Source: Macrostomum lignano
Taxonomy: Eukaryota
Length of the DNA: 56,124 nt
Reading direction: 5' to 3'
Assembly (NCBI GenBank): GCA_002269645.1
Contig: NIVC01000959.1
Coordinates: 1 to 56,124 of the forward strand
The notes under the pieces are model-generated. The model saw only the letters and a list, made by a program, of their open reading frames with translations, was not told the DNA's origin and did not search any database. This document shows positions 413 through 46,329 of the stretch, in pieces. Position 1 is the stretch's first letter, and each line of letters begins with the position of its first letter. Made by a program: the position numbers and the translations under genes.

Positions 413-7667
<7,255 letters not shown>

Positions 7668-8881: not shown

Positions 8882-9822
8882 CCTGATCCCACTGCTTACA
8901 CCTGTGATCCCACTGCTCACATCTCTGATCCCACTGCTCACATCTCTGATCCCACTGCTCACATCTCTGATCCCACTGCTCGGATCTCTGATCCCACTGC
9001 TCACATCTTTGATCCCACTGCTCACATTTCTGATCCCACTGCTCACATCTCTGATCCCACTGCTCACATCTTTGATCCCACTGCTCACATCTCTGATCCC
9101 ACTGCTCACATCTCTGATCCCACTGCTCACATCTTTGATCCCACTGCTCACATCTCTGATCCCACTGCTCACATCTCTGATCCCACTGCTCACATCTCTG
9201 ATCCCACTGCTCACATCTCTGATCCCACTGCTCACATCTCTGATCCCACTGCTCACATCTCTGATCCCACTGCTCACATCTCTGATCCCACTGCTCACAT
9301 CTCTGATCCCACTGCTCTCATCTCTGATCCCACTGCTCACATCTCTGATCCCACTGCTCACATCTCTGATCCTACTGCTCACATCTCTGATCCCACTGCT
9401 CACATCTCTGATCCTACTGCTCACATCTCTGATCCCACTGCTCGCATCTCTTATCCTACTGCTCGAATCTCTGATCCCACTGCTCACATCTCTGATCCCA
9501 CTGCTCGCATCTCTGATCCCACTGCTCACATCTCTGATCCTACTGCTCACATCTCTGATCCCACTGCTCGCATCTCTTATCCTACTGCTCGAATCTCTGA
9601 TCCCACTGCTCACATCTCTGATCCTACTGCTCACATCTCTGATCCCACTGCTCACATCTCTGATCCTACTGCTCACATCTCTGATCCCACTGCTCGCATC
9701 TCTTATCCTACTGCTCGAATCTCTGATCCCACTGCTCACATCTCTGATCCCACTGCTCGCATCTCTGATCCCACTGCTCACATCTCTGATCCTACTGCTC
9801 ACATCTCTGATCCCACTGCTCG
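8882..9822 (+). repeat. 21-bp minisatellite (CTGATCCCACTGCTCACATCT), ~45 copies
   Basis: Direct inspection; immediately downstream of the GPCR stop. Confidence 0.98.
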
Positions 9823-9855: not shown

Positions 9856-12800
9856 TCAGCGACTGAGGCAGCCTCCATCCCCGCCTCCTTGGCGCAAGTC
9901 ACCGGTGGCCCCGGCAGTTGCCACCAGTCCTGAGCCGACCAACGGCAGCGAGACGCCGCCAGCGCAGTCCCCGCCGCAGTCGACGCGCCCAACTCCACCG
10001 CCTGCATCGCCTCCAGGAGGTCGGCAGCGGCAGATCAGCCGGCGCAGGTCGTCGCGAAATCTCGCCGACGACGCTGAGTAGACGAAGAAGTTCATCAGCG
10101 AATCGGTGACGGACAGCACGTTGGTGACGATGTCCGGGTGGAACGGCAGCCACTTCAGCAGCTCCGGCCAGAGCCCCAGCGCCGTTGTGGACACGAAGGT
10201 TGGAAACTCGAGCACGCAGAAGACGGCCGCCAGGCTGAGGACCATCCAGCTGGCTCGCTGGGAGGCCGCCTGACTTGACAGCCGCCTGTGCTGACACTTG
10301 GCGAGGCTGCGGCGGCTGCGGCGCAGCTGATGCCACATCACCGCGGTGGGCATCGGGATTAGCAGGGTCGGCACCAGAGACTGCGAGTTTCAGGGATTTA
10401 TTGGGCTTTAGGCTTTGCCAGCAGTTCACCATTCTCATCATTTTTGGCTTTGTGGCAACTGATGGGATCAGTGATGAGCAGGGATAGGCAGCGGCGGGAT
10501 CGGATGCCCAGTGCGGTGGGATCAGAGATGGGATTTGAGAGTGGTGGGATCAGAGATGGGATTTGAGAGTGGTGGCATCAGACATGGGATTTGAGAGTGG
10601 TGGGATCAGAGATGGGATTTGAGAGTGGTGGGATCAGAGATGGGATTTGAGAGTGATCAGATCAGAGATGGGATTTGAGAGTGATCGGATCAGAGATGGG
10701 ATTCGAGAGTGATGTGATCAGAGATAGGATTTGAGAGTGATCGGATTAGAGATGGTGGGATCAGAGATGGTGGGATCAGAGATGGTGGGATCAGAGATGG
10801 TGGGATCAGAGATGGTGGGATCAGAGATGGTGGGATCAGATCGAGATGGTGGGATCAGAGATGGTGGGATCAGAGATGGTGGGATCAGAGATGGTGGGAT
10901 CAGAGATGGTGGGATCAGATCGAGATGGTGGGATCAGAGATGGTGGGATCAGAGATGGTGGGATCAGAGATGGTGGGATCAGATCGAGATGATGGGATCA
11001 GAGATGGTGGGATCAGAGATGGTGGGATCAGAGATGGTGGGATCAGAGATGGTGGGATCAGATCGAGATGATGGGATCAGAGATGATGGGATCAGAGATG
11101 GTGGGATCAGAGATGGTGGGATCAGAGATGGTGGGATCAGAGATGGTGGGATCAGAGACGGTGGGATCAGAGATGGTGGGATCAGAGATGGTGGGATCAG
11201 ATCGAGATGGTGGGATCAGAGATGGTAGGATCAGAGATGGTGGGATCAGAGATGGTGGGATCAGAGATGGTGGGATCAGATCGAGATGGTGGGATCAGAG
11301 ATGGTAGGATCAGAGATGGTGGGATCAGAGATGGTGGGATCAGAGATGGTGGGATCAGAGATGGTGGGATCAGAGATGGTGGGATCAGAGACGGTGGGAT
11401 CAGAGATGGTGGGATCAGAGATGGTGGGATCAGAGATGGTGGGATCAGAGATGGTGGGATCAGAGATGGTGGGATCAGAGATGGTGGGATCAGAGATGGT
11501 GGGATCAGAGATGGTGGGATCAGAGATGGTGGGATCAGAGATGGTGGGATCAGAGATGGTGGGATCAGAGATGGTGGGATCAGAGATGGTGGGATCAGAG
11601 ATGGTGGGATCAGAGATGGTGGGATCAGAGATGGTGGGATCAGAGATGGTGGGATCAGAGATGGTGGGATCAGAGATGGTGGGATCAGAGATGGTGGGAT
11701 CAGAGACGGTGGGATCAGAGATGGTGGGATCAGAGATGGTGGGATCAGAGATGGTGGGATCAGAGATGGTGGGATCAGAGATGGTGGGATCAGAGATGGT
11801 GGGATCAGAGATGGTGGGATCAGAGATGGTGGGATCAGAGATGGTGGGATCAGAGATGGTGGGATCAGATCGAGATGGTGGGATCAGAGATGGTGGGATC
11901 AGAGATGGTGGGATCAGAGATGGTGGGATCAGAGATTGTGGGATAAGATCGAGATGGTGGGATCAGAGATGGTGGGATCAGAGATGGTGGGATCAGAGAT
12001 GGTGGGATCAGAGATTGTGGGATCAGAGATGGTGGGATCAGAGATGGTGGGATCAGAGATGGTAGGATCAGAGATGGTGGGATCAGAGATGGTGGGATCA
12101 GATCGAGATGATGGGATCAGAGATGGTGGGATCAGAGATGGTGGGATCAGAGATGGTGGGATCAGAGATGGTGGGATCAGAGATGGTGGGATCAGAGATG
12201 GTGGGATCAGAGATGGTGGGATCAGAGATGGTGGGATCAGAGATGGTGGGATCAGATATAGGATATGGAAGATTTTACGAGGAGATTCAGAGGATTCGAA
12301 CTCGGACTCGCCTGGAAGGCGTACACCGCCCAACTCAGGGCCTGGTTGCGCAGTAGCGGCCGGGCCACTATGCTGTCAGGCTCTAGGTTGGTGCACAGGA
12401 CGCCGGCCTCGGCGAGGTTGGCCGCCGCGGCCAGGCCGATCGCTAGCACCAGCGCCACGCCGAAGGCGGCGGCCAGGCGGCTCCGGTTGAACAGCAGGCA
12501 GCGTCTGACAGCCAGCGGCCGGGCAACCGCCTCGCAGCGGGCGGAGCAGATCAGCAGCACCGTCCAGTTGCGGGCCGACACCAGCGCGTTGATGGCAACG
12601 TGGACGCAGCTGGTGATGGCGAAGCTGGCGAGGGTGTGCCAGTGCTCGAGGCCGGTGCGCACGATGGCGACCTCGGCCAGCAGGGCACACTGCAGGCACA
12701 CCTCGGTGCAGGAGATGTACAGCAGCGACAGGCGAACTGCGCGATTGTCGAAATGCTGTCTGGCAAAGATGTACAGAGCCAGGGAGTTGGCGACCAGCGC

Positions 12801-12926
12801 AGTGGCGGCGATGGGCGCTATGACCAGGCAGGTGGCCCGCTCAGTGTCCAGGTAGTCATGCTCGTGCTCGTCCAGCGTCCGGTTCAGCTCGGACTGGTTG
12901 CAGCGGTCGCGGAAATAATACAGCAT
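9856..12926 (-). CDS. Orphan rhodopsin-like (class A) peptide-type GPCR, ~379 aa, FMRFamide/SPR/srw-like group
   Basis: Coding exons 12926-12312 and 10380-9856. N-terminal sequons NQS and NRT. Seven hydrophobic segments with TM1 [12 protein letters not shown]3 [20 protein letters not shown] (DRY-equivalent ARC), TM5 AVYAFQ|[11 protein letters not shown]6 FCVLEFP, TM7 [10 protein letters not shown] and helix 8 RFRDDLRRL. Start codon uncertain: there is an acceptor at 12960 and an in-frame upstream ATG at 13661. Confidence 0.88.
10510..12256 (+). repeat. 15-bp minisatellite (GGGATCAGAGATGGT), >100 copies, with a longer-unit subarray at the left end
   Basis: Fills most of the GPCR intron. Confidence 0.98.
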
Positions 12927-12966: not shown

Positions 12967-13628
12967 GATCCGATCCCACTGCTCACATCTCTGATCCCAC
13001 TGCTCACATCTCTGATCCCACTGCTCACATCTCTGATCCCACTGCTCGCATCTCTGATCCCACTGCTCACATCTCTGATCCCACTGCTCACATCTCTGAT
13101 CCTACTGCTCACATCTCTGATCCCACTGCTCACATCTCTGATCCCACTGCTCACAGCTCTGATCCCACTGCTCACATATCTGATCCCACTGCTCACATTT
13201 CTGATCCCACTGCTCACATCTCTGATCCCACTGCTTACACCTGTGATCCCACTGCTCACATCTGTGATCCCACTGCTCACATCTCTGATCCCACTGCTCA
13301 AATCTCTGATACCACTGCTCACATCTGTGATCCCACTGCTCACATCTCTGATCCCACTGCTCACATCTCTGATCCCACTGTTCACATCTCTGATCCCACT
13401 GCTCACATCTCTGATCCCACTGCTCGCATCTCTGATCCCACTGCTGACATCTCTGATCCCACTGCTGACATCTCTGATCCCACTGCTCACATCTCTGATT
13501 CCACTGCTCGCATCTCTGATCCCACTGCTCACATCTCTGATCCCACTGCTCACATCTCTGATCCCAGTGCTCATATCTCTGATCCCACTGCTCACATCTC
13601 TGATCCCAGTGCTCATATCTCTGATCCT
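12967..13628 (+). repeat. 21-bp minisatellite (CTGATCCCACTGCTCACATCT), ~31 copies
   Basis: Same unit as 8882-9822; immediately upstream of GPCR coding exon 1. Confidence 0.98.
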
Positions 13629-14634
13629 TATTAATGTTGAGATACGAGCGAAAAATATCATTTTCCATGCTTTCAATTTAATAACGCAACAAGCTGCAGT
13701 TCAGAAAATTTGTTTGTATTTCCAAATCTCCTTCGATCTCTTTCTACGAGATGTAATCGAAAGCTCCAGATGATGACCAGCGAAAACTGGATTGATGATG
13801 AAGCAGCAAGGACTTGTGAATCATCCAGAATTGTTTTGATCTTCTTTCAGAAAGCTTCACTCTTATCGAATTCATTGTATTCCTGCTTTCAGTGCGTTCA
13901 GTTCGAGCTAATGGTCTACTGCAATATTATAATGACTGCATGAATACAACTGGCTCTATATTCTCTCTAACAGTGTCAGTGCCAGTCAGTAAAGAGCAGC
14001 CACATTGAGCCGCAATCTCTCTTCTCTCTGTGTCAGCCGTATCTTTCAGGCACTTACAACTTACAACTACATAAATATGATTGATTGAGCAGTTCTCATT
14101 CCTAATAATTCCTTGTTTATCTCTTATCCTTTGTCGGAAACACTTGAAGCCGACTGTGCCACCCGGGCATGCAAAACACGCGCACTTATCACAGGTAGCA
14201 GCCATACCTGTAACACTATTGCACTGGCAGCAGATCTGGAAGCGCGGGCTCTCGGTTCCTGTCGAATTTATGACCCGGTACGCTCCGCGGGGTGGATCGA
14301 GGGAAGCGATATAAAACTCCGGGAGAATGGGGAACCAAACAAGGCAAAGTGCACCGGTGCAGCGGATCAGTAAATAGATGGGATGCAGCGGCCTAAGCGT
14401 GACGCCCCAGCTTAAAGTCCCGGTTTATCGGGCATCAACAGCGGGTCACGCCGGTGTCAAGTCAAAGAAATGCACAGCCATTCGGTAGAATAATGAAAAC
14501 AAAACATTGCCGAAAGCAGACAGCCGACAGATCATAAAAAGTACAACGCCTACAATAAGCTTGGAACTCTCGCTAGACCTTGCTGGAAACTTTGCTTTTA
14601 TTTTTTCTTTTTTCTGGGATCAGAGAGCTCAGAA

Positions 14635-14885
14635 AGAGATCAGAGAGAGATCAGAGAGATCAGAGAGATCAGAGAGATCAGAGAGGTCAGAGAGGTCAGA
14701 GAGGTCAGAGAGGTCAGAGAGATCAGAGAGGTCAGAGAGGTCAGAGAGGTCAGAGAGGTCAGAGAGGTCAGAGAGGTCAGAGAGGTCAGAGAGGTCAGAG
14801 AGGTCAGAGAGATCAGAGAGAGAGATAGATCAGAGACCAGACAAAGATCAGAGAGAGATCCGAGAGATATAGATATCAGAGAAGT
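14635..14885 (+). repeat. 9-10-bp repeat (AGAGAGGTC / AGAGAGATC)
   Basis: Direct inspection. Confidence 0.95.
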
Positions 14886-15365
14886 ATCAGAGAAACCAAA
14901 GAAGAATCAAAGGAAATCAATGGCTGAGAAGGAAAAGCAGGGGCAGTGGAGCCTGCAATGCTTTAGATGGCCACCAGTTAGAAGGGAAACAAGGCTCGAG
15001 GCCAAAAAGGTGAGCCAACAGCAACGATGCTTCAAGAATACGACTAAAAGAGAGAGGGGGGCAAACCCTGGATAGCGGATCTGTGAAGGTGAAACTGTAG
15101 GTGATGTAGCAGCGATCGGCCATGGCTAGAAAATCAGAGAAAGAGACAGATGGGGCTCGCCAGTCCGGCAGACACTGGAGTGCGCTCCAGTGGTTCCGCT
15201 TTAGTTGCCGGGCAACTTCCAGCCTATGTGGCTCTTCCAGTTGAAGGTTTGAAAAATGCGCTTGACAGAAATGCGGGGCCTGTCAGACAGCGGATTAAGG
15301 GTTGAGAGCAGCTGACGGATGATGGCGCTGCTGCTGCAGTTTCAGGCCCAGAAAACTGCACTCAA

Positions 15366-15812: not shown

Positions 15813-16252
<440 letters not shown>

Positions 16253-16759
16253 TTAATTCATTCCGGTTTTTCTACTATAAGTAGAATAGTGGGGTTAGTT
16301 AAGCATTTCTACTGCATTTATTGAAACATACCACTATCGAAAGCACCATGCAAAGGAAGGTCAAGTGCATGTTAAAATAGCCCAGAGGGCAACTGCTCAA
16401 TCACTGATGTGTAAAAGCAGGCGTTTTTTCGAAATTTCTAGGCTTAATAAAGTATGCGATAATTAATTATGCTTATTAAAAAGGATTTGGCTTATTAAAA
16501 ATTGTGAAAATTCTCAAATGAAGATGTTCTGGAAAAGTAGACAAGGAAGGTATGCAATGAAAAAAAATGAAATTCGCTGCTTCGTTTACGCGAAGTGAAA
16601 TTTTCTTACTGTCGTCAAAAATCTGTATTAGCAAGCGCTGCAATTTGCTATATAAGATTAAAAATTATTTACTAGATGCAACATTGCCCCCGCTGTGAGC
16701 AAGTTAATTGCTGATGCACCTACCGAACTGTGCAGTATTTGAGTCTGAAAGTCTGTAGC

Positions 16760-17560: not shown

Positions 17561-18545
17561 AGCAAGGAAGGTAACAGAGCATTAACTAACTCACTCGAGT
17601 CTCAAGGACAATTACCAAGGTAATGTTAGAAATTGATCAATTTTATCTATACGTCTACAAACTCTCGTATGCAAGGTCGATTCAAGATTAAAATTTTATG
17701 ATCCTGGAATCTTTCACGCCGGTGCAGATCTCAGGAGGAGATAAAATGTCAACCCGGAAGCGATAAGTTCACTTATCAAAATGAATAGATAGACATTGCA
17801 TAACTGACTGCAGGCGGTCTGAGGAAGTAAGTTTATACAACCTCAGTTTGCTGCATATCTTTCTTAAATAATCTTTCTTCACCTAATCTCCTAAATTGTG
17901 CACCAACTAATCTAATTGACTGTCTTATTGTCCTGTTTTTTGCTTATATATCTGTTTTCATGAGCTGACCAAGCTCAACCTTCAACTTTGAACTCTTGGG
18001 ACGACAGCGAAAAAAAACAAAAAAGCATCACGCAACTGGGCAAAACACTTTCAACAGAAACAGGTCTTTCATTCAGTACCGCCTGTGATCAGTAGGGTAG
18101 ACAGTACGGCTGTCTCCGAGCAGAAAATTCAATCAGCATCTATAAAAATGGCTGCTTCATCGGACAGATTAATTTTAGCAAACACTCGCTGCCTTTCATT
18201 CCGTGTTCTATTCAATTTTGCCACTTTATCGATGCGTCTCGCAGAATCCTTGGGGATTTAGCAGATGATTTTTGCTTGTTCCAATCGCCTTGGAAATCTG
18301 AATGCGCAGTTCGCAACAGGTTTGCGTGCAATTCGGGCAGGTGCACTAGTTCGACTGGTTGTGTCATGTGACCTGAACTATAGCGATTCGTACGGTTGGA
18401 ATATTGAGTTACACTACCCTGTCATGTCGCTTTTTATGTTGAAAGTTTCAAGCAAATCTTTGATCTGGGCAGGGGTAAGAGTTGCTTCTCTGTGAATAGT
18501 TGCGTAGACGTCCACAAGGATCTGCAGCCCAAGCAAGTGAGTGTG

Positions 18546-19245
18546 GACAATGTGGGCAGTTGGTTAGTTATCCGTCATGGACAGTGTGGGCAGTTGGTTA
18601 GTTATCCGTCATGGACAGTGTGGGTAGTTGGTTAGTTATCCGTCATGGACAGTGTGGGCAGTTGGTTAGTTATCCGTCATGGACAGTGTGGGTAGTTGGT
18701 TAGTTATCCGTCATGGACAGTGTGGGTAGTTGGTTAGTTATCCGTCATGGACAGTGTGGGTAGTTGGTTAGTTATCCGTCATGGACAGTGTGGGCAGTTG
18801 GTTAGTTATCTGTCATGGACAATGTGGGCAGTTGGTTAGTTATCCGTCATGGACAGTGTGGGCAGTTGGTTAGTTATCCGTCATGGACAGTGTGGGTAGT
18901 TGGTTAGTTATCCGTCATGGACAGTGTGGGTAGTTGGTTAGTTATCCGTCATGGACAGTGTGGGCAGTTGGTTAGTTATCCGTCATGGACAGTGTGGGTA
19001 GTTGGTTAGTTATCCGTCATGGACAGTGTGGGCAGTTGGTTAGTTATCTGTCATGGAGAGTGTGGGCAGTCGGTTAGTTATCCGTCAAGGACAGTGTGGG
19101 CAGTTGGTTAGTTATCCGTCATGGACAGTGTGGGCAGTCGGTTAGTTATCCGTCAAGGACAGTGTGGGCAGTTGGTTAGTTATCCGTCAAGGACAGTGTG
19201 GGCAGTTGGTTAGTTATCCGTCATGGACAGTGTGGGCAGTTGGTT
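18546..19245 (+). repeat. 34-bp minisatellite (GGACAGTGTGGGCAGTTGGTTAGTTATCCGTCAT), ~20 copies
   Basis: Direct inspection; ~500 bp upstream of the precursor A TATA box. Confidence 0.97.
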
Positions 19246-19747: not shown

Positions 19748-20015
19748 TATAAATAGAAGAGCAGCGGAGATGGGCTGATCGGATCATTTTTGGTTCGGAC
19801 GAAATCAATCGACGCTGGAGGTAAGCGTTGCTCATTTTTAAGCTTTGGAGACAGATTCAAGGCAAGCTTGCTAGGCCAAGAATTTAGTTATCTAAGTATT
19901 CCTTCTTGCCACGGTACTGGGAGTTGTCCGTGCCAAAACTCATTGCAGGATTTCTAAAACGTTTTAGACCTAAATGCACGGGGCGATTAATTTTCTTCCT
20001 TGATCCTTATCGCAG
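19748..20015 (+). promoter_or_regulatory. TATA box, non-coding first exon and 5'UTR intron of precursor A
   Basis: TATAAATA at 19748-19755; donor GGAG|GTAAGC at 19821; pyrimidine-rich acceptor ...ccttatcgcag| ending at 20015, 33 nt before the ATG. Confidence 0.6.
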
Positions 20016-20048: not shown

Positions 20049-20453
20049 ATGCAGTCGCACATTTTCATCAGCCTGTGCCTTGGCCTGGCCGCGGCAACCG
20101 TCGCCGTGTCGGGTGCCTCCATCGGCAACTACGAGATGTCGAAGCGGCAGACGGACGCCTGGAGCGGCCACAAGCTCGAGGTGCCGATCAAGTGGCGCAA
20201 GCGTGGCCCAGAGCTCATCATTGACCGGCTAGACAAACGCGGCCCCGAGATGCTGCTCCAGCGCCACTTGTCTGGCAAGCGATTCCACAAGCGCGGCCCG
20301 GAGCTCATCATCGACCGGCTAGACAAGCGCGGCCCGGAGCTCATCATTGACCGGCTGGACAAACGTGGCCCCGAGATGCTGCTCCAGCGTCACTTGTCTG
20401 GCAAGCGATTCCACAAGCGCGGCCCAGAGCTCATCATCGACCGGCTGGACTGA
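20049..20453 (+). CDS. Neuropeptide/peptide-hormone precursor A (134 aa, signal peptide, multiple KR-flanked peptides)
   Basis: Hydrophobic signal MQSHIFISLCLGLAAATVAVSG, then KR-delimited QTDAWSGHKLEVPIKW, GPELIIDRLD x4, GPEMLLQRHLS-GKR x2 (amidation signal) and FH x2. Repeat copies differ at synonymous sites (att/atc, cca/ccg/ccc, cgt/cgc). Confidence 0.92.
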   Translation: MQSHIFISLCLGLAAATVAVSGASIGNYEMSKRQTDAWSGHKLEVPIKWRKRGPELIIDRLDKRGPEMLLQRHLSGKRFHKRGPELIIDRLDKRGPELIIDRLDKRGPEMLLQRHLSGKRFHKRGPELIIDRLD

Positions 20454-20940
20454 GCCAAAGCTGAGGCGCAGTGCTCACTATGACTTCGATGCTGGACACT
20501 GGTTTTTCCCTGCTTGTTTCATCGTCTGGATCAGCTGGCAATTTAAAATAAATATACCCTTTAGCTTAAGGCATCGTGCTTGCACTTCTGATATACCATC
20601 TTGAGTGGCTGATAGCAAAAGCTAGACTGGTTCAGTAACAATTCACAAACATTAACGTGTGCCCATGAGCTATGCAACTTTTACTTAAAGAAGTCAGCAA
20701 ACAAGCCACATATTCAAACACTGCGAGTAGTGTATTTCTGGTGGTTACTCTGCGGTCAGTGTTACTGATTTTGTAAGGGGAGGGTCTGTAAAACTACAAA
20801 AAATATCGGCGGCTAAGGCTTTTAGTCACGGATAGCTCTGTCGGCCATCCGTTAAAAATTTACTTTTAACTTCATACGATAGAAAAACCTTCCGTAAAAG
20901 TGATTTTGTCACTGGACGAGTGACATTCAATGCAAACCTC

Positions 20941-22563: not shown

Positions 22564-23896
22564 TGCACAAACCCGAGAAGTTATAAATGCCTCGAGAAAG
22601 TTTTCTAAAAATCTGCGAGGTCAGTTGGCATCGGATTAACAACGTCCGCCTGGAAGTCGGACTGGGAGACATTCGAATATTGAGCTAAGCATAGGCTAAG
22701 ATGTAACAGAAACAGCTGGAACGAGAAGGAATTGCATGTTATTTTAAAGAATAACTTAAGTCTTATTCAACTCCTAATCGCAAGATACTCAGGTCAGTTT
22801 TTACCGACTCACTGTGTGTCAAGATTGCCTGGCCAGGGTATGCTACTATACTCCCATTGACTGCAGCGGGTTGTTTTTGTTTCTGTACGCGTATCTTTCT
22901 TGCCACCAAACGCTTGGCTAGCTAAGTTGGGGCTCAGGAGCCCACAAATATATGGTAAAACTGGACGGCCGGCCTCCAGTCTTGGACACGTCTCATTCGT
23001 CTGTGCCACCTCGGGAGCCACTTCCCATGGAAAATACTCGTAGCTACTCGAACACTTGCAATCTGACTTCGTCATCAGAAAGATCATCAGGGACCTCTTG
23101 CTTACTGCAACCGGTACCAGCTCTGCATTTCCTAAGGGAGTTTTTCAAGCGTAAAAAGCTTTGAGGTTACTTGCAGTAGTCACTTGCTAAAAGATACAAG
23201 CTATACTGTTGACTTTGCAGAGAAAATGTTTCCGCTTTTGCGCTTCTATTCGCTTAAAAATAATTTCATTTAAAGCAAGTCGTTTCGGAATTGAAGGGCT
23301 GGGAGATGTGCAAAAATAGTGAAGCAGAGGGTGCTTGTCCTCGTGCTCAATGGGGGCGGAGGCAGTTTTAGAGCAGTTTCCCTACTGCAACAGGCGATTG
23401 GCCCGGGAAGTGAAGGAGAGAAGGTCTACCATCCCCCAGTGCGACTTCTCCGAGGAATAAATTTCTCCAAAACGGGGCGCTGCGTGGGAGTCGCTGCTGT
23501 TGCTGTTTCTATCGCTGACACTGCCGCGCGAGTTGCTCATCCGCCCTGCCTCTTTCTGCTAGCTGCAGCGAGTTCGAAGTATTGGGTAAGCTGCGACGCT
23601 TGATGAAAGTGGGGGGGGGGGCGGGGAAGTCAGCGGCTGGTGCTTTCTAGATGAGCTGCAATTTCCAGAAAAGTTCTGACCCGGATGCAGCTCTGCACTA
23701 TTGAACTTTGGACAGTTAATCCGAAAAATTGCTTTACTGCTGTTTTAAGGCTAGAAAAGAGCTGGCTTGCAATAATAACCTGCAAAAACATGGCAGTGTG
23801 AAACAAGCTGATTTATGCTTTGATTGACCTCGCATGACCTCACATAAATAAAAAGCGACGAAAAATTAGCCCCATAGATCAAAACGTTTATTGAGA

Positions 23897-24345
23897 ATGT
23901 GCATCCGTGATCCCAAGAAGCAGTTTAGAATGCGCATCCGTGATCCCAAGAAGCAGTTTAGAATGCGCATCCGTGATCCCAAGAAGCAGTTTAGAATGCG
24001 CATCCGTGATCCCAAGAAGCAGTTTAGAATGCGCATCCGTGATCGCAAGAAGCAGTTTAGAATGCGCATCCGTGATCCCAAGAAGCAGTTTAGAATGCGC
24101 ATCCGTGATCCCAAGAAGCAGTTTAGAATGCGCATCCGTGATCCCAAGAAGCAGTTTAGAATGCGCATCCGTGATCCCAAGATGCAGTTTAGAATGCGCA
24201 TCCGTGATCGCAAGAAGCAGTTTAGAATGCGCATCCGTGATCCCAAGAAGCAGTTTAGAATGCGCATCCGTGATCCCAAGAAGCAGTTTAGAATTTGCAT
24301 CCGTGATCCCAAGAAGCAGTTTAGAATGCGCATCCGTGATCCTAA
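23897..24345 (+). repeat. 33-bp minisatellite (GCATCCGTGATCCCAAGAAGCAGTTTAGAATGC), ~13-14 copies
   Basis: Direct inspection; in the putative 5'UTR intron of precursor B. Confidence 0.97.
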
Positions 24346-24397: not shown

Positions 24398-24688
24398 ATG
24401 TCAGCTTGGCTCCCAGTTCTCTTGGGCCTAGTGCTCCTTGTCACTGTGTCAGCTGCTCCGGCCGCCAACGCCGACAAGCTTCAGGCTGCCTCGGGCCATC
24501 GGATGAAGCGGCAGACGGACGCGTGGAACGGGCACATCATCGATCTTGGCCGCAAGCGTCGCCGCTGGACCAACAGCGAAGCCGTCGTCGAATCGCCGCG
24601 TTGGCGTCGCGTCCCCTCGCGCTTGGGACCGCGCCGCGGATGGCTGCACGACAACGACGGCGACCTCTTGGTGATGGAAGACTATTGA
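24398..24688 (+). CDS. Neuropeptide precursor B (96 aa), paralog of precursor A
   Basis: Signal MSAWLPVLLGLVLLVTVSA; KR-QTDAWNGHIIDLG-RKRRR (predicted pQ...L-amide); further RR sites. Acceptor ...tccactgccccag(cag) just upstream; candidate upstream donor attgg|gtaagc at 23586. Confidence 0.85.
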   Translation: MSAWLPVLLGLVLLVTVSAAPAANADKLQAASGHRMKRQTDAWNGHIIDLGRKRRRWTNSEAVVESPRWRRVPSRLGPRRGWLHDNDGDLLVMEDY

Positions 24689-37573: not shown

Positions 37574-38349
37574 ATGGAGTCCAGGAGCAAGCAGTTTTAT
37601 CCTTAGTGAGAGAGAAGCGATCTATTAAAAAGAGAAGAAGGTAAATAGCATGACCTTTTTGCCCGACAGGCCAATAACCAGTGCCCTTTAACGCCATAGA
37701 CTATTAACACCCGCTAATGTCGAATTTGCGGGCAAATAATGTTCTTTTGACCATAGACAGTTTGTTGTTTCTGTTTCTTGCTCTCTACGCTGCCCGACTC
37801 TGCCCCCTAACACCCCCACCCTTGCTATGAAAGTGTAGCCTGAGCAAATATGTTTATGGTAGCTCGTATATTAGCTTGATTCTCTCACTTAGGATTTAAC
37901 TGCTTGCTAATCAGTTGGCTTGTAAAAAATACAACAGTGTTCTGTTAACGGATTTCGCAGCAAAGATTAGCCTTCTGCGCAGCGTTAAACCAGAGGTTTT
38001 ACCATAGACAAAACTCATGCACTTGTTTCATTCGCAAACTCAGAAGCTGAAAATGTGAGATTAGATGTGCTATCTTGCTAATGCATAGACTTCTATCCTA
38101 GTTTCTAGCAGTATTTTAACCAATGATTCAAGTTTCCTTAGATCTGAAACAAATCCAATTTCAATTATCTTTCTTACGTCTAATCCATATTTACTAGCTA
38201 GATAAAAACTATTAGATGCTACACTGCTGTGCAAGGATTGACACCTATATTTGAATTATTCTGTCTGATATTTGCAAACATTTTTCTTTCAAGTATTTTC
38301 TGTTTTGGGTAAACAACAAGCGGATTCAGGAATTATTGGATGAGATCAG

Positions 38350-38992
38350 GGCGATGGGATCAAAGCGATGGGATCAGAGTGATGGGATCAGAGTGATGGG
38401 ATCAGAGTGACGGGATCAGAGTGATGAGGTCAGATTGATGGGATCAGAGTGATGGGATCAGCGTGATGGGGTCAGAGTGATGAGGTCAGAGTGATAGGAT
38501 CAGAGTGATGGGATCAGAGTGACGGGATCAGAGTGATGAGGTCAGAGTGATGGGATCAGAGTGATAGGATCAGAGTGATGGGGTCAGAGTGATGGGATCA
38601 GAGTGATGGGATCAGAGTGATGGGGTCAGAGTGATGGGATCAGAGTGATGGGATCAGAGTGACGGGATCAGAGTGATGAGGTCAGAGTGATGGGATCAGA
38701 GTGACGGGATCAGAGTGATGGGATCAGAGTGACGGGATCAGAGTGATGAGGTCAGAGTGATGGGATCAGAGTGACGGGATCAGAGTGATGAGGTCAGATT
38801 GATGGGATCAGAGTGACGGGATCAGAGTGATGAGGTCAGATTGATGGGATCAGAGTGATGGGGTCAGAGTGATGAGGTCAGATTGATGGGATCAGAGTGA
38901 TAGGATCAGAGTGACGGGATCAGAGTGACGAGGTCACAGTGATGGGATCAGAGTGACGGGATCAGAGTGATGAGGTCACAGTGATGGGATCA
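38350..38992 (+). repeat. 14-bp minisatellite (GATGGGATCAGAGT)
   Basis: Direct inspection; shares the GGGATCAGAG core with the GPCR arrays. Confidence 0.96.
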
Positions 38993-40464
38993 GAAGAGTG
39001 GGCTACAGAAGCCTCAGAAAGCAGGTCCAAACGAAAAAGCAACAAGAGCTCAGACGCGGCAGTGGCTGCCAGTATATCTCAGGCCAGAGGAGAAGGGCAG
39101 GAAAAGATTTCAAAGGCGGGACAGAAGCAGGTCCCGCCGCGCGCGGCAGTGCAGTGTGTGCTGAATTTTATTTTCAGTTCTGTTTCACCTGTAAAACTCT
39201 ATAGTAGCGCAAAGCTAAAAGAGGCGCCGCAGCAGGCAACAGCGCCGCAGGAGAGAATTTGGGAAGATGTGCGCTCCGGCCTTGCTTTATGCTTAGTCAA
39301 AGACACGGACAAGCAAACAAACGAACAAAAAGCAAAAGTGTTGCCAACAAACACAAACAGAGAGAGAGAAAACCACAGCGGACAAAATGGGAAGTAGAAG
39401 GCGGAGTCGAGCTCCGCAGCAGCCCAGCGCAGGTCTGCATGTACAAAATAGGCCTGTTCGCAGTGCGAGCCGAATCTGGCTGGGCTGGCGGGGGCGGCAG
39501 AAAAAAGCAGCACAAGAAAAGCAAAGTAGAAGAGAGAAAAAAACGGAACACGCACGCAAAAAAACCGCAAAAAACTCGGTGGGGGGGGCGGCATGGGTGA
39601 CAGAAAATGGAGGCAAAATTCACGGATTTCATTTCTTCTTCTTGAAAAAGAGACCTGCGCCGGACATTACGAGCTAGTTTTTGAAAAAGCACTGGCGACA
39701 GACATGAAGCGAAAACAAATTGCTGAATAAAAGCGAGGGACTGAATGCCAAAATGGAGGCTTAAATTAAAAAAAATTGGAATATAGCCGACTTTGTTCAA
39801 CACACAGTACTAGCAATAGTATTTAATGGCTCTGCAAAAGAAGACTTCGGGGTCAAGGTAGAAATCAAATTGTTGTTGAGCGCAGACAACAGCGGTCAGA
39901 AATCAATTTACAAGCAGAAATTTTCACCAAAAACGCTTTTTTTGATTTTGAATATTCACGCCGCCTTACTGCCGGTCTCTGCTAGGCCCAAGTTCAATGC
40001 CCGGGGTAGTTCAGCCGACAAATGAAAAAATAGAGGGGAGCGAGACAGACAGAACAGAAAAAAAGCAGACAACGGCAGCGCGCATTGGAACAGCTGAGGA
40101 GAAGCATGGCGGGGGCGGAACCTTTCTAAAGCGCAATTTACAGACAATATTGAACTTCTTGACTGGCTGTCAAAGAGAGTGCGTGTGCAACAGAGAGGCA
40201 CAACATCAAAGAGAGAGACAGAGAAAAAAACGCACAAGCACACAAAAAAGCAGAAAGAAAAAATCTCATCAAATGACACCGACAAACAAAATTTTGTTTA
40301 AACGCGCCACAACAGCAAAAAATGTGTCTCTGTCTGTCCTGTCCGATGGGAGCGAGAATACAGTTAGGCGTTCGGAGGGCTGAGAAGGAGGAGGAGGAAG
40401 AGGAGGTGTGGGCTGAGAAGGAGACGGAGTCGAGCATGTCGCTGCCGGAGCTCGGAGCGGCGGC

Positions 40465-43400
40465 TCACTGAGGCTCGGCAGATGCGGTCAGCCCCATGGG
40501 ATGGTAGGCCGTAGCGGTGGGGTCCAGGCCGGCCGCCGCGCTGGCATAGTACAGCGGAGCCGCGTCCGGGGTGGCGTACAGCGACGTCTGCGGCGCGGCC
40601 AGCAGCTGCGGTCCGTACATGCCGGCCGCGGCAGCGTAACTTGACGGGTCGATGAGCCAGGAATTGCGCTGGTGCTGCGAATGCGAGTTTTGGTTACGGC
40701 TGGATTTTCACAACGGCTGAGATTACTTATCTGACTCTTGTCACTCTACTGACTCAACTGACCATCTGACTCAAGTCCCAGATCAGTCTGGGACTTGCCA
40801 CTCCGCTGACTTGTCACTCCATTGACTTGTCACTCCATTGACTTGTCACTCCATTGACTTGTCACTCCACCTGACCACCTATCTATTCTGGGACTTGTCA
40901 CTCCATTGACTTGTCACTCCACCTGACCACCTATCTATTCTGGGACTTGTCACTCCATTGACTTGTCACTCCGCTGACTTGTCACTCCACCTGACCTATT
41001 TAGTCTGAGACTTATCGCCCCACCTGACCTACCTAGTCTGAGACTTGTCACTCCACCTGACCTACCTAGTCTGAGACTTGTCACTCCACCTGACCTACCT
41101 AGTCCGGGAATCCAGTCCGGGATTAGACAACCCCCTAGGCTCCCACCTGGTGCAGCCTCCTCACCTGATACAGCGAAGGCGCTCCGGCTCCGGCCCCTCC
41201 GGTCATGGCGGAGGCGGGCGACGCCTGGAACACGTAGCTGGTGTGAGCTGGCGCGCTGGGCGGCGCCGCGGCCGGGGTCACCCGGCTGGTGTAGCTGGTC
41301 AGGGCCGAGGACTGCACGGCGGCCGGGCTGTACAGTTGGGCTGCGGCTCCGGACTGCAGCATCTGGGCGTTGTAGCCGCCGGGCATAACAGCAGCGGCGG
41401 CGGCTGCGGCGCCTCGGGCGGCGGCGGCCAGAGCGGCCGGATTCTGCTGGAAGATGCTGAGCGGCAGCTGGCCGCCAGGCGGGCTGGGCCCGAGGCCGTG
41501 ATGGGCGGCCAGGCCGGGCTGCTGCTGCTGCTGGGCGCGCTGCTTCTTCCGCTGATTGGTCTTGTCGGCCAGCTTGGCCTCCAGCGGCCTCGGGCAGCCG
41601 TACTTCTGGCCAAGGGCGGTGCCGTTCTTATTGATGTGAGCGATCGCTGTCACAGCGTCCTGGTCCTTCTCGAACCGGATGAAGCCGGCCCCGGTGGCGC
41701 TGGTCTGCTGCCGGGTGCTCGGGTCGGTGGCCCGCATCACTCGGCAGCTGATGATGCGGCCAGTCAGGCCGTTGCCCAGCTCGTCGGTGAAGACGCGGCT
41801 CATCCATTCCTCGTTGCACTCCGGCCGGGTGGGCAGGTTCTTGATGTAGATGTTGGTGGGGTCCTTCTCGGACTCCTGCGCCGTGGGGGGGGGAATTAGG
41901 GAAGGCTTTTTTATATTTGACTCTTGGTTGGTGCATTAACAATAAAACTGCTCACTTTGAGCTGCTGCATCCGTGACTGCAATTTTTATAATTCTCATTC
42001 TTTCAACCTACTTTGATAAATGTTAAAATATTACTATGGCGCTTCTCCGTGAGAATGCTGAAGAGCTGTTGATGAAAGCTAGAGAGTGATTCCCTGGTGG
42101 AAGCTGGAGAGTGATTCCCTGGGGGAAGCTAGAGGGCGATTCCCTGGGGGAAGCTAGAGGGTGATTCCCTGGGGGAAGCTAGAGGGTGATTCCCTGATGG
42201 AAGCTAGCAACTCCATCGAAGGTAAAGTTGATTTCCTGATGGAAGCTGGAGGGTGATTCCCGGGGGGAAGCTATAGGGTGATTCCCTGGGGGAAGCTATA
42301 GGGTGATTCCCTGGGGGAAGCTAGAGGGTGATTCCCTGGGGGAAGCTAGAGGGTGATTCCCTGATGGAAGCTAGCAACTCCTCCCTGATCGAAGGTAAAG
42401 TTGATTTCCTGATGGAAGCTGGAGGCCGACTTCAGTAAGTCGCATCAGCTGACTGTACAGCGATGGACCAATCGATAATATTTCATGCTGACAACAACAA
42501 ATAAAATGATTCTCAAACACGAGGTGCGCCATAGACTACTAGATTATGAGTAGTATTATCATAATGTCTGAAGTACTGCACAAGTTGCACTAGTTAACCA
42601 ACTATCCAAAAAACCGACTGTGTTTTGCCCTGTTTCCATTTTTTCTAAAATAAAATAAATTATTGGCTTTCAACAGTTCAAAGCGAACTCTGATAGGAAA
42701 TTCGGGAAGAAAAAGGATAGTAGGGATAAAAGGTGAGCAAAGTAACCCGTGCTGTGCTTCGCTTGGCGTGCCAACACTCGGTATAAATGTAAATGAAGCC
42801 AGGTCGGTGTCACTCTGGTCTATTAAAACATTTATTACCCCATCCCACATATACTAAATCTACTTTACACATACTAAAATAACTAAGATGGGCCACTCAT
42901 GCATATATACTTAGTAAAACAGCTTTCTACTTACAGTTTAGTAGCAAAGAAGAATACAAAAGCTATTTTATAAAAATAAAGGCAGCTGAAAGTTTAGAAG
43001 CCCAAGCTTGCAGGCGTAAACAACTTGCTAATTGGTTCAGCAATAATGTACATTAGCCAGTCCACTGAAATGTACATGGCAGCTTTAGGCTGGAATTCCG
43101 AGAAAGGCAATAAAAATTGGGGCGCGGCGGGGGCAGTGTGGAAAGGCGCGGTTGGAGGGTTTAAGCTGGGGGTAAGAGCCAATAAATGAGCCTTGACTTC
43201 AAAAATACATTAAAATGCTTCTGTTTAAATTACTACTGAACTGAAAGTAGCTTACAGGCAAATGTGCTGAGTGGCCCATCTCTAGTTATTCTAGTATCTG
43301 TGATCTACCGAAAGATAAGAATTCACAATTCTGGCATTAAAAACACACACACAAAATAAACTTTCTTGCCGCGATTGCCGTGTGTGACAAAAAGACAAAA

Positions 43401-45893
43401 AGCCGTGTTTTTTTTAAAAAACTAACAACTTTCCAAGGAAAGAAAGTTCGCTGATTTCTTTCCAATCAAACAAACAATTAACTGTGCTCTGAAGTAAAAC
43501 AAAGCTTTAAAAAAAGTAAAAATTATAACGATTCAAAAATAACCTGCCTAGTTAACTCTATATAATATGGCGAATTTCCTAGCTGTACTACTTGCCAGTA
43601 GCGAGAAGTCATCACTACGGTAATAAGATGCTCTGCAGTCAGAAATGAGACACGCCCTTCTATTGTAATAATATCTGTTTCAATAACCGAAGCGACTTGA
43701 GTCCAGCTACCCACCTGCAGCGAGGCGCTGCGCAGAGCGAATCTGCCTTCCTACATGTGTCAGTTTGAATGGGGAAAATGAGACAGATTTGTTCACAGAC
43801 TATCTTCTAATCCCGATTCGATAAAAACGAAAAAAATATATAACATGATATGGAGACACGTGGCTGACAACACAGGGGATATAGATATTATGATTATTTA
43901 AATAATATTCGACATCTGTAATAATATTTTACGACAATATGATGCATACGATTCGAGTGCAGTAATAAGTAAAATAGTAACACAACTTAATAATAATAAT
44001 AATAATAATAATACTAACAAACACAAAACTGTGTGGCACTAAACTTTAGTACGTGAAACAAAAACTCTTCCGCATTAGCCTAATTTATGCATAATAATAA
44101 TACTAATAGTAATAATAATAGTAAATAATAACACACACATATAGAGACGTGCCGCAAGGTACACAACCAAAGAGGACAATGATGATTGACAGGTAGCGAT
44201 AATGTGTGTGTTTTGCTGTGTTGGGTAAGTCGGTTGTGGTTCTCTTGATAATGCTAGGCAATATTCTCTTTAATAAAGTAATACGCAATTACCTCTTTGG
44301 CCTAGAGCGCAGCGAAAACGGATGAAAGAAAGAAGGGGCAGCAATGTAAAATTATGAATTAGTTTTAGGCAAGCGATGACTGTTAAGCCTGGTGTGCACT
44401 CACTGAAGCGCCTGCGTTCAACACAGACCACTATCAGACTGCTCAGTTGCAATATGCACCAAAGTAACTTCCCGTAGAAATATTTGCAGCAGTTAAAAGC
44501 CCGACGGACACTGGGGATAGCGGCAACCCATACGGGACACACTGGGGATAGCGGCAACCCATACAGGACAACTGGAAATAGCAGCAACCCATACAGGACA
44601 CACTGGGGATAGCGGCAACCCATACAGGACACACTGGAGGTAGCGGCCACCCATACAGGACACACTGGGGATAGCGGCAACCCATACAGGACACACTGGG
44701 GATAGTGGCAACCTATGCAGGACACACTGGGGATAGCGGCAACCCATACAGGACACACTGGGGATAGCGGCAACCCATACAGGACACACTGGGGATAGCG
44801 GCAACCCATACAGGATACACTGGGGATAGCGGCAACCCATACAGGACACACTGGAGGTAGCGGCCACCCATACAGGACACACTGGGGATAGCGGCAACCC
44901 ATACAGGACACACTGGGGATAGTGGCAACCTATGCAGGACACACTGGGGATAGTGGAAACCCATACAGGACACACTGGGGATAGCGGAAACCCATACAGG
45001 ACACACTGGGGATAGCGGAAACCCATACAGGACACACTGGGGTAGCGGCAACCCATGCAGGACACACTGGAGGCAGCGGCAAACCCACACTGAAGGACAC
45101 ATAGCCTTGCATACAGTTAAAGAATAGTTAAACAAAAGCAATACCAATTAGTTAAACAGTTAGAAAGCAGACAAATTACAAATCTGGGACAAAAACCCAA
45201 GGCCCAGAAACAGCACTCACCCTGGCATAGCTAATCTGCAGTTTGCCATTGCGCAGAGAAGTCTTGGTCAGAGCCTCCAACGCCAGCTGGGCCTGGGTCT
45301 CGTCGCGGAAGTCAACAAAACCGTAGCCTGATGAAGCGGGAGGGGGGTATCCCGGTAGAGAGAGGGAGTGCGGACAGATTTGAGACTGGGAAAAGAGCCA
45401 AACATGCGTAGCTGGCTGACGCATGCCTTGACTGCCGCGAGAACTCTTAGTAACACTAAGAAATTTAATTGGAAGCTCACGAGGCGGAAAAACTGGAACT
45501 GGAACTGGTTGACTGTTTAACTGGCAAACAGACTCAGGGGAAGGAGAGCTGGAGAGAAGTAGCCAAGGCTGGGGAGATGCAAACTGTAGCGGATTGAAGT
45601 ATTGATACGAGAGAATGAGAACAAATAGGCAGGGAATTGTGAAAAAGAAAAGATGTCAGGGTACTGGGAAAAAACTAAAAAGATAAGCCGGAATCTAAAG
45701 CACTAAGATAGATAGATAACACTGTCTCATAACATAGAGATACTAAGACACAGACAGACAAACAGGCAGGTTGGCAGACAGACTGATATAGACAGATAAA
45801 GACAGACACAGACAGACAGACAGACAGACGGACAGACAGGTTGGCAGACAGACTGATATAGACAGATAAAGACAGACACAGACAAACAGACAG

Positions 45894-45960
<67 letters not shown>

Positions 45961-45980
45961 GGCAGGCAGGCAGGCAGGCA

Positions 45981-46041
<61 letters not shown>

Positions 46042-46329
46042 ACAGACAGACAGACAGACAGACAGACAGGCAGGCAGGCAGGCAGTCACAGGCAGACAGA
46101 ATGACAGGTGCCGCTCACCCTTGCACTGTCCAGTCTGCTCATCCAGCACGGCCTTGGTGGAGTTGATAGCATCGCCAGGAATGCTGGCATTCTCGGACAC
46201 CAACTGGCGAATGGTCTCATCCGTATCGGACGGCTGCAGGCCCCGGATGTACAAATTGGTGTTGCTCTTCCGGTCGTTCTCGCCGTTGCCAGGGGAAGTG
46301 TTGCGCGAGGATGCGCTTGGCTGGATCAT
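40465..46329 (-). CDS. shep: RBMS/MSSP (alan shepard-like) two-RRM RNA-binding protein, ~412 aa; upstream exons may exist
   Basis: Exons 46329-46119, 45327-45221, 41875-41165, 40674-40465 (1239 nt, phases consistent). RRM1 SNTNLYIRGL...STKAVLD...CKGYGFVDF; RRM2 DPTNIYIKNLP...GAGFIRFE...PLEAKLAD; Q/A/P/Y-rich C-terminus. These match the RBMS/shep signatures. Confidence 0.9.
40790..41102 (+). repeat. Degenerate minisatellite built on GACTTGTCACTCC
   Basis: Direct inspection; shep last intron. Confidence 0.9.
42080..42425 (+). repeat. 24-bp minisatellite (GGTGATTCCCTGGGGGAAGCTAGA-like) with a higher-order duplication
   Basis: Direct inspection; the block gatggaagctagcaactcc...atcgaaggtaaagttgatttcctgatggaagctggagg occurs twice. 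Confidence 0.92.
42868..43302 (+). mobile_element. MITE-like element, copy 2 (in a shep intron)
   Basis: Same TIRs and interior as 37131-37573 (e.g. cttgctaattggttcagcaataatgtacattagccagtccactgaaatgtacatgg). Confidence 0.75.
44505..45085 (+). repeat. 31-bp minisatellite (CACACTGGGGATAGCGGCAACCCATACAGGA), ~18 copies
   Basis: Direct inspection; shep intron. Confidence 0.96.
45745..46098 (+). repeat. (GACA)n/(GGCA)n compound microsatellite
   Basis: Direct inspection; shep intron. Confidence 0.96.

What the first reader, a model, noticed from the sequence alone, without database searches (positions are those of the whole stretch)
20202..20453. Precursor A encodes two related repeated peptides, GPELIIDRLD x4 and GPEMLLQRHLS-amide x2, plus FH dipeptide spacers
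Seen: order A-B-FH-A-A-B-FH-A, an internal higher-order duplication. A and B share GPE-hydrophobic-x-R-x-L and differ in charge and amidation (A ends in free acidic D, B has GKR). The IIDRL of peptide A echoes IIDL in the gene B peptide, suggesting the modules are related or shuffled. Inference: one precursor releases co-transmitters at 4:2 stoichiometry. The KR-FH-KR dipeptide is unusual.
Basis: partly seen in the sequence, partly recalled or inferred. Interest (0 to 1): 0.72.

Follow-up and report, generated by a model that had tools for sequence, protein, structure and literature searches.

The report
Flatworm multi-copy neuropeptide-like precursor gene
This is a small, RNA-supported gene of the flatworm Macrostomum lignano with the textbook layout of a neuropeptide or peptide-hormone precursor; it has no detectable relatives, so it is a plausible new peptide gene of an ordinary kind, not a new kind of system.

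Summary
ORF 20049-20453 (+) encodes 134 aa: a hydrophobic signal peptide, KR-QTDAWSGHKLEVPIKW-RKR, then twice [GPELIIDRLD-KR-GPEMLLQRHLSG-KR-FH-KR-GPELIIDRLD].

- **Organism:** the window is a whole contig of Macrostomum lignano (assembly Mlig_3_7). The gene is annotated "hypothetical protein BOX15_Mlig017097g3".
- **Selection:** the two 126-bp units differ at 7 sites, all synonymous third-position transitions (P about 6e-4), so the peptide sequences are under purifying selection.
- **Not an assembly artefact:** three separately assembled contigs carry the same two-unit array.
- **Open point:** the public RNA-derived protein holds only one unit (92-aa core). No canonical 126-nt intron explains this. 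The A:B ratio is 2:1 either way.
- **Relatives:** Pfam, a 5.8-billion-protein word search, an HMMER scan of 1.84 billion representatives and the held literature gave none.

Best reading: a lineage-restricted, convertase-processed multi-peptide precursor. Processing, amidation, cell type and bioactivity are inferred, not shown. New member of a known kind; modest interest.

The parts
19748..19755 (+). TATAAATA box, about 25-30 bp upstream of the first transcribed bases seen in the public gene model
   Evidence: Sequence and motif position. Its role as a promoter is inferred.
19779..19820 (+). Non-coding exon 1 (5' UTR; true 5' end not defined)
   Evidence: The public partial protein P0006 reads SDHFWFGRNQSTLE|ISSHFSTRRQK-MQSH. 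That is this stretch spliced to 20016 onward.
19821..20015 (+). 195-bp GT-AG intron in the 5' UTR
   Evidence: GTAAGC...TCGCAG boundaries. The splice is used in the RNA-derived public model. The annotation is RNA-seq driven (PMC5730564).
20049..20453 (+). Coding sequence of precursor A (134 aa plus stop), BOX15_Mlig017097g3
20049..20114 (+). Signal peptide (residues 1 to about 22; cleavage predicted around VSG|A or SGA|S)
   Evidence: Mean Kyte-Doolittle hydropathy is 2.46 for residues 5-20 against -1.03 for the rest, and (-3,-1) sites lie at residues 21-24. This is a heuristic; no SignalP was run.
20148..20195 (+). Single-copy peptide QTDAWSGHKLEVPIKW between KR and RKR. Its N-terminal half is shared with gene B. 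An N-terminal Gln could cyclise to pyroGlu.
20199..20324 (+). Higher-order unit 1: KR-A-KR-B(G)-KR-FH-KR-A
20325..20450 (+). Higher-order unit 2. It encodes the same 42 aa and differs from unit 1 by 7 synonymous transitions.
20205..20234 (+). Peptide A copy 1, GPELIIDRLD. Further copies lie at 20295-20324, 20331-20360 and 20421-20450.
20241..20276 (+). Peptide B copy 1, GPEMLLQRHLS plus Gly (amide donor), followed by KR. Copy 2 lies at 20367-20402.
20283..20288 (+). FH dipeptide between two KR sites (second copy at 20409-20414); most likely a spacer
   Evidence: Sequence. Its role is inferred.
20547..20552 (+). AATAAA polyadenylation signal, 94 nt after the stop codon
24398..24688 (+). Tandem paralogue, gene B (96 aa, BOX15_Mlig028894 family): signal peptide, KR-QTDAWNGHIIDL-G-RKRRR, then further RR-delimited segments
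24505..24536 (+). 32-nt stretch of gene B that is 29/32 identical to gene A 20141-20172 (encodes KRQTDAW-x-GH)
   Evidence: Local alignment score 51 against 20.4 +/- 2.6 for shuffles, maximum 33.

Best explanation
Gene A is a small two-exon gene of Macrostomum lignano that encodes a 134-aa preproprotein of the neuropeptide or peptide-hormone precursor type.

Proposed mechanism:
1. The N-terminal signal peptide (about 22 residues) takes the protein into the secretory pathway.
2. PC2/PC1-type prohormone convertases cut after each KR or RKR.
3. A carboxypeptidase E-type enzyme trims the basic residues.
4. Peptidylglycine alpha-amidating monooxygenase converts the Gly-extended B peptide to GPEMLLQRHLS-amide.
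5. The N-terminal Gln of QTDAWSGHKLEVPIKW may cyclise to pyroglutamate.

One genomic-length precursor would yield 1 QTDAW peptide, 4 GPELIIDRLD (free acid, net charge -2), 2 GPEMLLQRHLS-amide (net +1) and 2 FH spacer dipeptides. These would be packaged and released together, presumably acting on G-protein-coupled receptors.

Evolution: the array arose by divergence of an ancestral GPE peptide into A and B, followed by duplication of a 126-bp A-B-FH-A block. Gene A and gene B, 4 kb downstream, are tandem paralogues. They keep only the KR-QTDAW-x-GH peptide start in common.

Shown: the ORF, the repeat anatomy, the cleavage and amidation motifs, synonymous-only variation, the RNA-supported spliced gene model, the paralogy, and presence in three contigs.

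Inferred: every processing step, neuronal expression, co-release, receptors and bioactivity.
For: - **Anatomy:** ORF and peptide layout; 126-bp x 2 array.
- **Selection:** the two units differ at 7 sites, all third-position synonymous transitions, P about 6e-4.
- **Signal peptide:** hydrophobic N-terminus with (-3,-1) sites, in both gene A and gene B.
- **Peptide boundaries:** Gly-KR follows B only, and the last A copy ends at the stop codon.
- **Gene model:** TATA box, GT-AG 5' UTR intron and AATAAA.
- **RNA support:** the public protein PAA74283.1 uses exactly that splice, and the Mlig_3_7 annotation is built only from RNA-seq and transcript evidence (PMC5730564).
- **Reproducibility:** the same two-unit array with the same 7 differences is found in three contigs.
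- **Paralogy:** gene B shares KRQTDAW(S/N)GH, 29/32 nt identical, far above shuffles.
- **Precedent:** the same criteria (signal sequence plus multiple dibasic sites) were used to define planarian prohormones (PMC2953531).
Against: - No peptide detection, no localisation and no functional data are available.
- No homologue exists outside M. lignano against which to test conservation of the KR and GKR sites.
- No Pfam family matches.
- The public RNA-derived protein contains only one 126-bp unit. The mature mRNA may therefore encode 2 A and 1 B rather than 4 and 2.
- The three contigs are about 99.7% identical around the gene. They confirm the assembly but add almost no evolutionary depth.
- The signal peptide was judged by a heuristic only.
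Confidence: 0.78

Rival explanations
1. The precursor is secreted and convertase-processed, but it is not neuronal. It would be made in a gland (adhesive, rhabdite, prostate or seminal-fluid, pharyngeal) and released to the outside or to a mating partner as pheromone-like, seminal or defensive peptides.
For: No cell-type information could be obtained. The family is lineage-restricted, as reproductive and secretory-gland genes often are. KR processing is not exclusive to neurons (established knowledge of furin and PC enzymes).
Against: Gly-KR amidation signals, short peptides of 10-16 residues and a conserved pyroGlu-type peptide shared by two paralogues are the classical neuroendocrine signature. 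A and B are anionic or near-neutral, unlike typical cationic antimicrobial peptides.
Confidence: 0.14
2. The two-unit array is an assembly or annotation illusion. The real gene and mRNA would carry a single A-B-FH-A unit, as in the 92-aa public protein, and the second unit would be a long-read assembly duplication.
For: All three public gene models give a 92-aa core from a span of 404-405 bp, so one unit is skipped. No gene with the 134-aa product is on record.
Against: - Three separately assembled contigs have two units with the same 7 inter-unit differences. An artefactual duplication would not give 5.6% divergence confined to synonymous third positions.
- No canonical GT/GC-AG 126-nt intron can produce the 92-aa product.
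- The annotation pipeline mapped a short-read de novo transcriptome with BLAT (PMC5730564), a route by which collapsed tandem repeats appear as gaps.
Confidence: 0.05
3. It is a chance or non-functional ORF: one more repetitive open frame in a genome full of minisatellites, transcribed but not producing functional peptides.
For: The window holds more than 25 tandem-repeat arrays, and many give long repetitive ORFs. No homologues were found.
Against: Unlike the minisatellite ORFs, this one has a signal peptide, an ATG in good context after a spliced leader exon, a polyadenylation signal, exact dibasic punctuation, synonymous-only repeat divergence, and a paralogue that conserves a peptide start at 29/32 nt.
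Confidence: 0.03

Closest known systems
Flatworm prohormone genes defined by signal peptide plus multiple dibasic sites (the Schmidtea mediterranea npp, spp and ppp genes; Collins et al. 2010, PMC2953531)
   Same: Same architecture and the same recognition criteria. They are small secreted precursors with several copies of short peptides between KR sites, some Gly-extended for amidation, and many lack homologues outside flatworms.
   Different: No sequence relationship was found. None of the strings TDAW, DAWNG, DAWSG, IIDRL, GPEL or GPEM occurs in that paper's held supplementary files. HMMER finds no relative. No peptidomic or expression evidence exists here.
Multi-isoform precursors with a fixed isoform ratio (proenkephalin with Met- and Leu-enkephalin; FMRFamide/FLRFamide precursors of molluscs). 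Comparison from established knowledge.
   Same: One polypeptide carries several copies of two related peptides, so the release ratio is set by copy number. The arrays grew by internal duplication.
   Different: The peptide sequences are unrelated, with no RFamide or YGGF motif. The Pfam FARP and opioid families do not match. The two isoforms here differ in charge and in amidation.
Pedal peptide / orcokinin-type precursors of protostomes. A lead from memory, not tested by a model.
   Same: Many copies of short, acidic, non-amidated peptides separated by KR, as for peptide A (net charge -2, free C-terminal Asp).
   Different: Peptide A has no aromatic residue and is shorter (10 aa). No similarity was detected by any search. 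It is not filed as a member.
Its own tandem paralogue, gene B (BOX15_Mlig028894; window 24398-24688)
   Same: Signal peptide, short pro-region, then KR-QTDAW-(S/N)-GH at the same relative position. This stretch is 29/32 nt identical. Same strand, 4 kb apart.
   Different: Gene B has QTDAWNGHIIDL-Gly-RKRRR, an amidated 12-mer, and no GPE repeats. Gene A's version is a non-amidated 16-mer followed by the A/B array.

Membership tests
Convertase-processed multi-copy neuropeptide / peptide-hormone precursor (generic class) | N-terminal signal peptide | tested here: met
   The hydrophobic core spans residues 5-20 (mean hydropathy 2.46 against -1.03 for the rest), with small-residue (-3,-1) sites at 21-24. 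This is a heuristic, not SignalP.
Convertase-processed multi-copy neuropeptide / peptide-hormone precursor (generic class) | Repeated short peptides, each bounded by dibasic sites | tested here: met
   There are 9 KR sites. All six GPE peptides are preceded by KR (the first by RKR), and the last ends at the stop codon.
Convertase-processed multi-copy neuropeptide / peptide-hormone precursor (generic class) | C-terminal Gly before the basic pair as amide donor (in at least some peptides) | tested here: met
   Both copies of B are followed by G-KR, and gene B's peptide by G-RKRRR. A has none.
Convertase-processed multi-copy neuropeptide / peptide-hormone precursor (generic class) | Selection acts on the mature peptide sequences | tested here: met
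   All 7 differences between units are synonymous, P about 6e-4. Conservation between the paralogues is confined to the QTDAW peptide start. The only gene B substitution between contigs (N59S) lies outside that peptide.
Convertase-processed multi-copy neuropeptide / peptide-hormone precursor (generic class) | Transcribed; expressed in neurons or endocrine cells | tested here: inconclusive
   Transcription follows from the RNA-built public gene model with the spliced leader exon. Cell type could not be looked up: no paper in the library mentions the gene identifiers.
Convertase-processed multi-copy neuropeptide / peptide-hormone precursor (generic class) | Mature peptides detectable, dependent on prohormone convertase | not testable with these tools
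   This needs mass spectrometry. Predicted masses are given.
Described flatworm neuropeptide families (npp/spp/FLP/NPF) | Sequence similarity of the mature peptide to a described family | tested here: not met
   - No Pfam family matches.
- No true relative in 1.84 billion representatives.
- No string match in the Schmidtea prohormone supplements.
- No paper holds the peptide strings.
- The 2009 catalogue of flatworm npp genes is not held, so that list was not checked.
FMRFamide-related peptides | C-terminal RF-amide (RFG followed by basic residues) | tested here: not met
   There is no RFG in the ORF and no Pfam hit.
Pedal peptide / orcokinin | Conserved aromatic and acidic motif in non-amidated peptides of 13-20 residues | tested here: not met
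   Peptide A is 10 residues and has no aromatic residue. The motif definition comes from established knowledge, not from a model run here.

The most novel reading that the evidence does not exclude
Genes A and B would form a Macrostomum-restricted (possibly recently originated) peptide signalling family. Its conserved ligand is pyroGlu-TDAW-x-GH..., and gene A has additionally invented and amplified a new pair of oppositely charged co-peptides, A and B. The divergent, unannotated rhodopsin-type GPCR 7-10 kb upstream on the opposite strand could be part of the same system, giving a physically linked ligand-receptor pair.
Probability: 0.07. Interest if true: 0.5.

Novelty: new member of a known kind. 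Interest (0 to 1): 0.3.

Why it matters
M. lignano is a transgenic, regenerating model flatworm, and no description of these peptides could be found in the literature held here. If the peptides are real, the gene adds three or four new candidate signalling peptides to the model. It also adds a two-gene family whose conserved element (pQTDAW-x-GH) is easy to follow across Macrostomum species.

There is a practical point too. The public protein for this gene lacks one 42-residue repeat unit at all three loci. This shows how transcript-derived annotation can under-count peptide copies in tandem-repeat precursors.

None of this changes how neuropeptide precursors are understood.

Tried and rejected
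1. **Homologue searches.** The word-indexed search of 5.8 billion proteins with gene A and with gene B returned only the M. lignano proteins themselves. The full HMMER scan of 1.84 billion representatives gave three weak hits at E about 1e-5. On reading them, they are long fungal-type and other repeat proteins matching 'LLLEKRGAE'-like repeats by composition, so I rejected them.
2. **Pfam.** Nothing for genes A or B.
3. **Literature.** No paper holds the peptide strings; the 'QTDAW' hits are equation-encoding junk. No paper holds the gene identifiers or M. lignano npp names. The 2009 flatworm neuropeptide catalogue is not held. The planarian prohormone supplements have no matching strings.
4. 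**IIDRL/IIDL relation.** Rejected as chance.
5. **A real 126-nt intron to explain the 92-aa product.** No GT/GC-AG pair fits.
6. **Assembly duplication.** Rejected.
7. **Constraint from contig comparison.** The contigs differ at only 12 positions in 4.6 kb, so an identical CDS is uninformative.
8. **Bacterial promoter/terminator scan.** Irrelevant for this eukaryote, and at background level.
9. **More precursor-like ORFs in the window.** None beyond A and B.
10. **Third word-indexed protein search.** Left unused. Its only remaining use was naming the neighbouring GPCR, which does not bear on the verdict.

Full report
**What is there.**
Window 20049-20453 (+) is an uninterrupted ATG-to-TGA frame of 134 codons. 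It reads MQSHIFISLCLGLAAATVAVSGASIGNYEMS-KR-QTDAWSGHKLEVPIKW-RKR, followed by two identical 42-residue blocks. Each block reads (K)R-GPELIIDRLD-KR-GPEMLLQRHLSG-KR-FH-KR-GPELIIDRLD, and the last peptide ends at the stop codon. Tandem Repeats Finder reports a 126-bp period, 2.0 copies, 94% matches. The units are 20199-20324 and 20325-20450.

**Source.**
Gene B's protein is 99% identical to [quoted passage not shown]. The cluster look-up shows that the window is a complete 56,124-bp contig of the Mlig_3_7 assembly (GCA_002269645.1). On it, gene A is annotated as PAA74283.1, "hypothetical protein BOX15_Mlig017097g3, partial".

**Is it a real gene?**
- The public partial protein reads SDHFWFGRNQSTLE|ISSHFSTRRQK-MQSH.
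- That is window 19779-19820 spliced to 20016 onward across a 195-bp GT-AG intron (19821-20015).
- A TATAAATA box sits at 19748-19755, and AATAAA at 20547-20552, 94 nt after the stop.
- The Mlig_3_7 annotation was built only from RNA-seq (StringTie/TACO) and a BLAT-mapped de novo transcriptome, with ORFs called by TransDecoder (PMC5730564). The model therefore implies transcription.
- The N-terminus has a 16-residue hydrophobic core and small-residue (-3,-1) sites at residues 21-24. This is a heuristic judgement.

**Selection.**
- The two 126-bp units differ at 7 positions. All are third-codon-position transitions and all are synonymous.
- With 7 random transitions, the chance of that outcome is about 6e-4.
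- Among the four A copies, the only variable sites are the third positions of the Pro, Ile and Leu codons. The two B copies differ by one synonymous Arg change.
- The peptide sequences, not merely the DNA repeat, have therefore been kept.

**Assembly artefact?**
The same gene lies on three contigs: the window, NIVC01000197.1 and NIVC01003721.1. All three have two units with the same seven differences. The third contig lacks one C in a C-run inside B copy 1; this could be a long-read error or a real frameshift, and I cannot tell which. The contigs are about 99.7% identical around the gene (12 differences in 4.6 kb). That fits the known redundancy of this assembly (180 Mb in duplicated blocks). 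They confirm the structure but give no evolutionary depth.

**A discrepancy.**
- All three public gene models span 404-405 bp but give a 92-residue core, so one unit is skipped.
- No GT/GC-AG pair 126 nt apart yields that product.
- The simplest cause is a short-read de novo transcript in which the repeat collapsed and was then mapped with a gap.
- A shorter allele or mRNA cannot be excluded here.
- The A:B ratio is 2:1 in either case.

**Relation to gene B.**
- Gene B (24398-24688, +) encodes a signal peptide, then KR-QTDAWNGHIIDL-G-RKRRR, then RR-delimited segments.
- Genes A and B share KRQTDAW(S/N)GH (9/14 identities in BLASTP).
- At DNA level, 29 of 32 nt are identical (20141-20172 against 24505-24536). 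The local score is 51 against 20.4 +/- 2.6 for shuffles, with a maximum of 33. Nothing else aligns.
- The two genes are thus tandem paralogues whose one conserved element is the start of a probably pyroGlu-blocked peptide.
- A and B themselves are clearly related: GPE[LM][IL][IL][DQ]R, score 27 against 8.1 +/- 3.5.

**Mechanism (inferred).**
The signal peptide is removed. PC-type enzymes then cleave at KR and RKR; a PC2 homologue marks all neural cell types in this species (PMC12435804). Basic residues are trimmed, B is amidated, and the N-terminal Gln may cyclise. FH is most simply a spacer left between two cleavage sites. Alternatively, the first KR is not cut and the product is GPEMLLQRHLSGKRFH.

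**Comparison with known families.**
- No Pfam family matches either precursor.
- No relative appears in the 5.8-billion-protein search.
- The full HMMER scan returned only compositional matches to unrelated repeat proteins.
- The planarian prohormone supplements contain no matching strings.
- No paper in the library holds the peptide strings or gene identifiers.
- By architecture, the gene belongs with flatworm "secreted peptide prohormones". By sequence, it belongs to no described family.

**Verdict.**
The precursor interpretation is well supported at the sequence level but untested biochemically. This is a new member of a known kind, of modest interest.

Noticed in passing
window 9859-10374 (-) and 12255-12899 (-): An unannotated rhodopsin-type GPCR appears to be split by an intron that holds the 15-bp minisatellite at 10515-12256.
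- The downstream ORF matches Pfam 7TM_GPCR_Srw (E 2.9e-6) and weakly 7tm_1 (TM5-7, NFFVY motif). Its best solved relatives are galanin receptor 2 and aminergic or CCK receptors, at E >= 0.003.
- The upstream ORF looks like TM1-4 by eye but has no Pfam or PDB hit.
- It lies 7-10 kb upstream of gene A on the other strand.
- No gene is called there in the sister contig.
   Followed up: partly
L003 (NIVC01003721.1), aligned to window 20243: The third genomic copy of gene A lacks one C in the GGCCCCGAG run at the start of B copy 1. If real, this would shift the frame. It may be a long-read homopolymer error.
   Followed up: partly
window 20199-20450 and the public proteins P0001/P0006: The public annotation under-counts the repeats. 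The 92-aa core product lacks one 42-residue unit at all three loci, although the genomic frame is open for 134 aa.
   Followed up: yes
window 8883-9821, 10515-12256, 12972-13627, 14618-14893, 38339-38994: A family of related minisatellites shares a GGGATCAGAG / CTCTGATCCC core. The same 21-bp unit occurs on both sides of the GPCR ORFs, and a 15-bp derivative lies between them in the opposite orientation. Overall the window has more than 25 tandem arrays, including perfect (TAG)123 at 5591-5960 and (GTTA)111 at 15813-16255.
   Followed up: no
window 18544-19245 and 23894-24342: Each of the two precursor genes is preceded by an unrelated minisatellite: 34 bp x 20.6 about 500 bp upstream of gene A's TATA box, and 33 bp x 13.6 ending 56 bp before gene B's ATG. 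The array before gene B is open in gene B's frame, so mechanical ORF lists fuse the two.
   Followed up: no
window 24572-24574 (gene B codon 59): The only amino-acid difference between the window's gene B and the copies on the other contigs is N59S. It lies in the segment after the RKRRR site, not in the QTDAWNGHIIDL peptide.
   Followed up: yes
window 41138-41803 (-) and 45730-46392 (-): Two minus-strand ORFs look by eye like exons of an RNA-binding (RRM-type) protein (NLYIRGL..., GAGFIRFEKDQDA...). No Pfam hit at E <= 0.01; the only hit in the second ORF is a low-complexity Cys repeat caused by an (ACAG)n array.
   Followed up: partly
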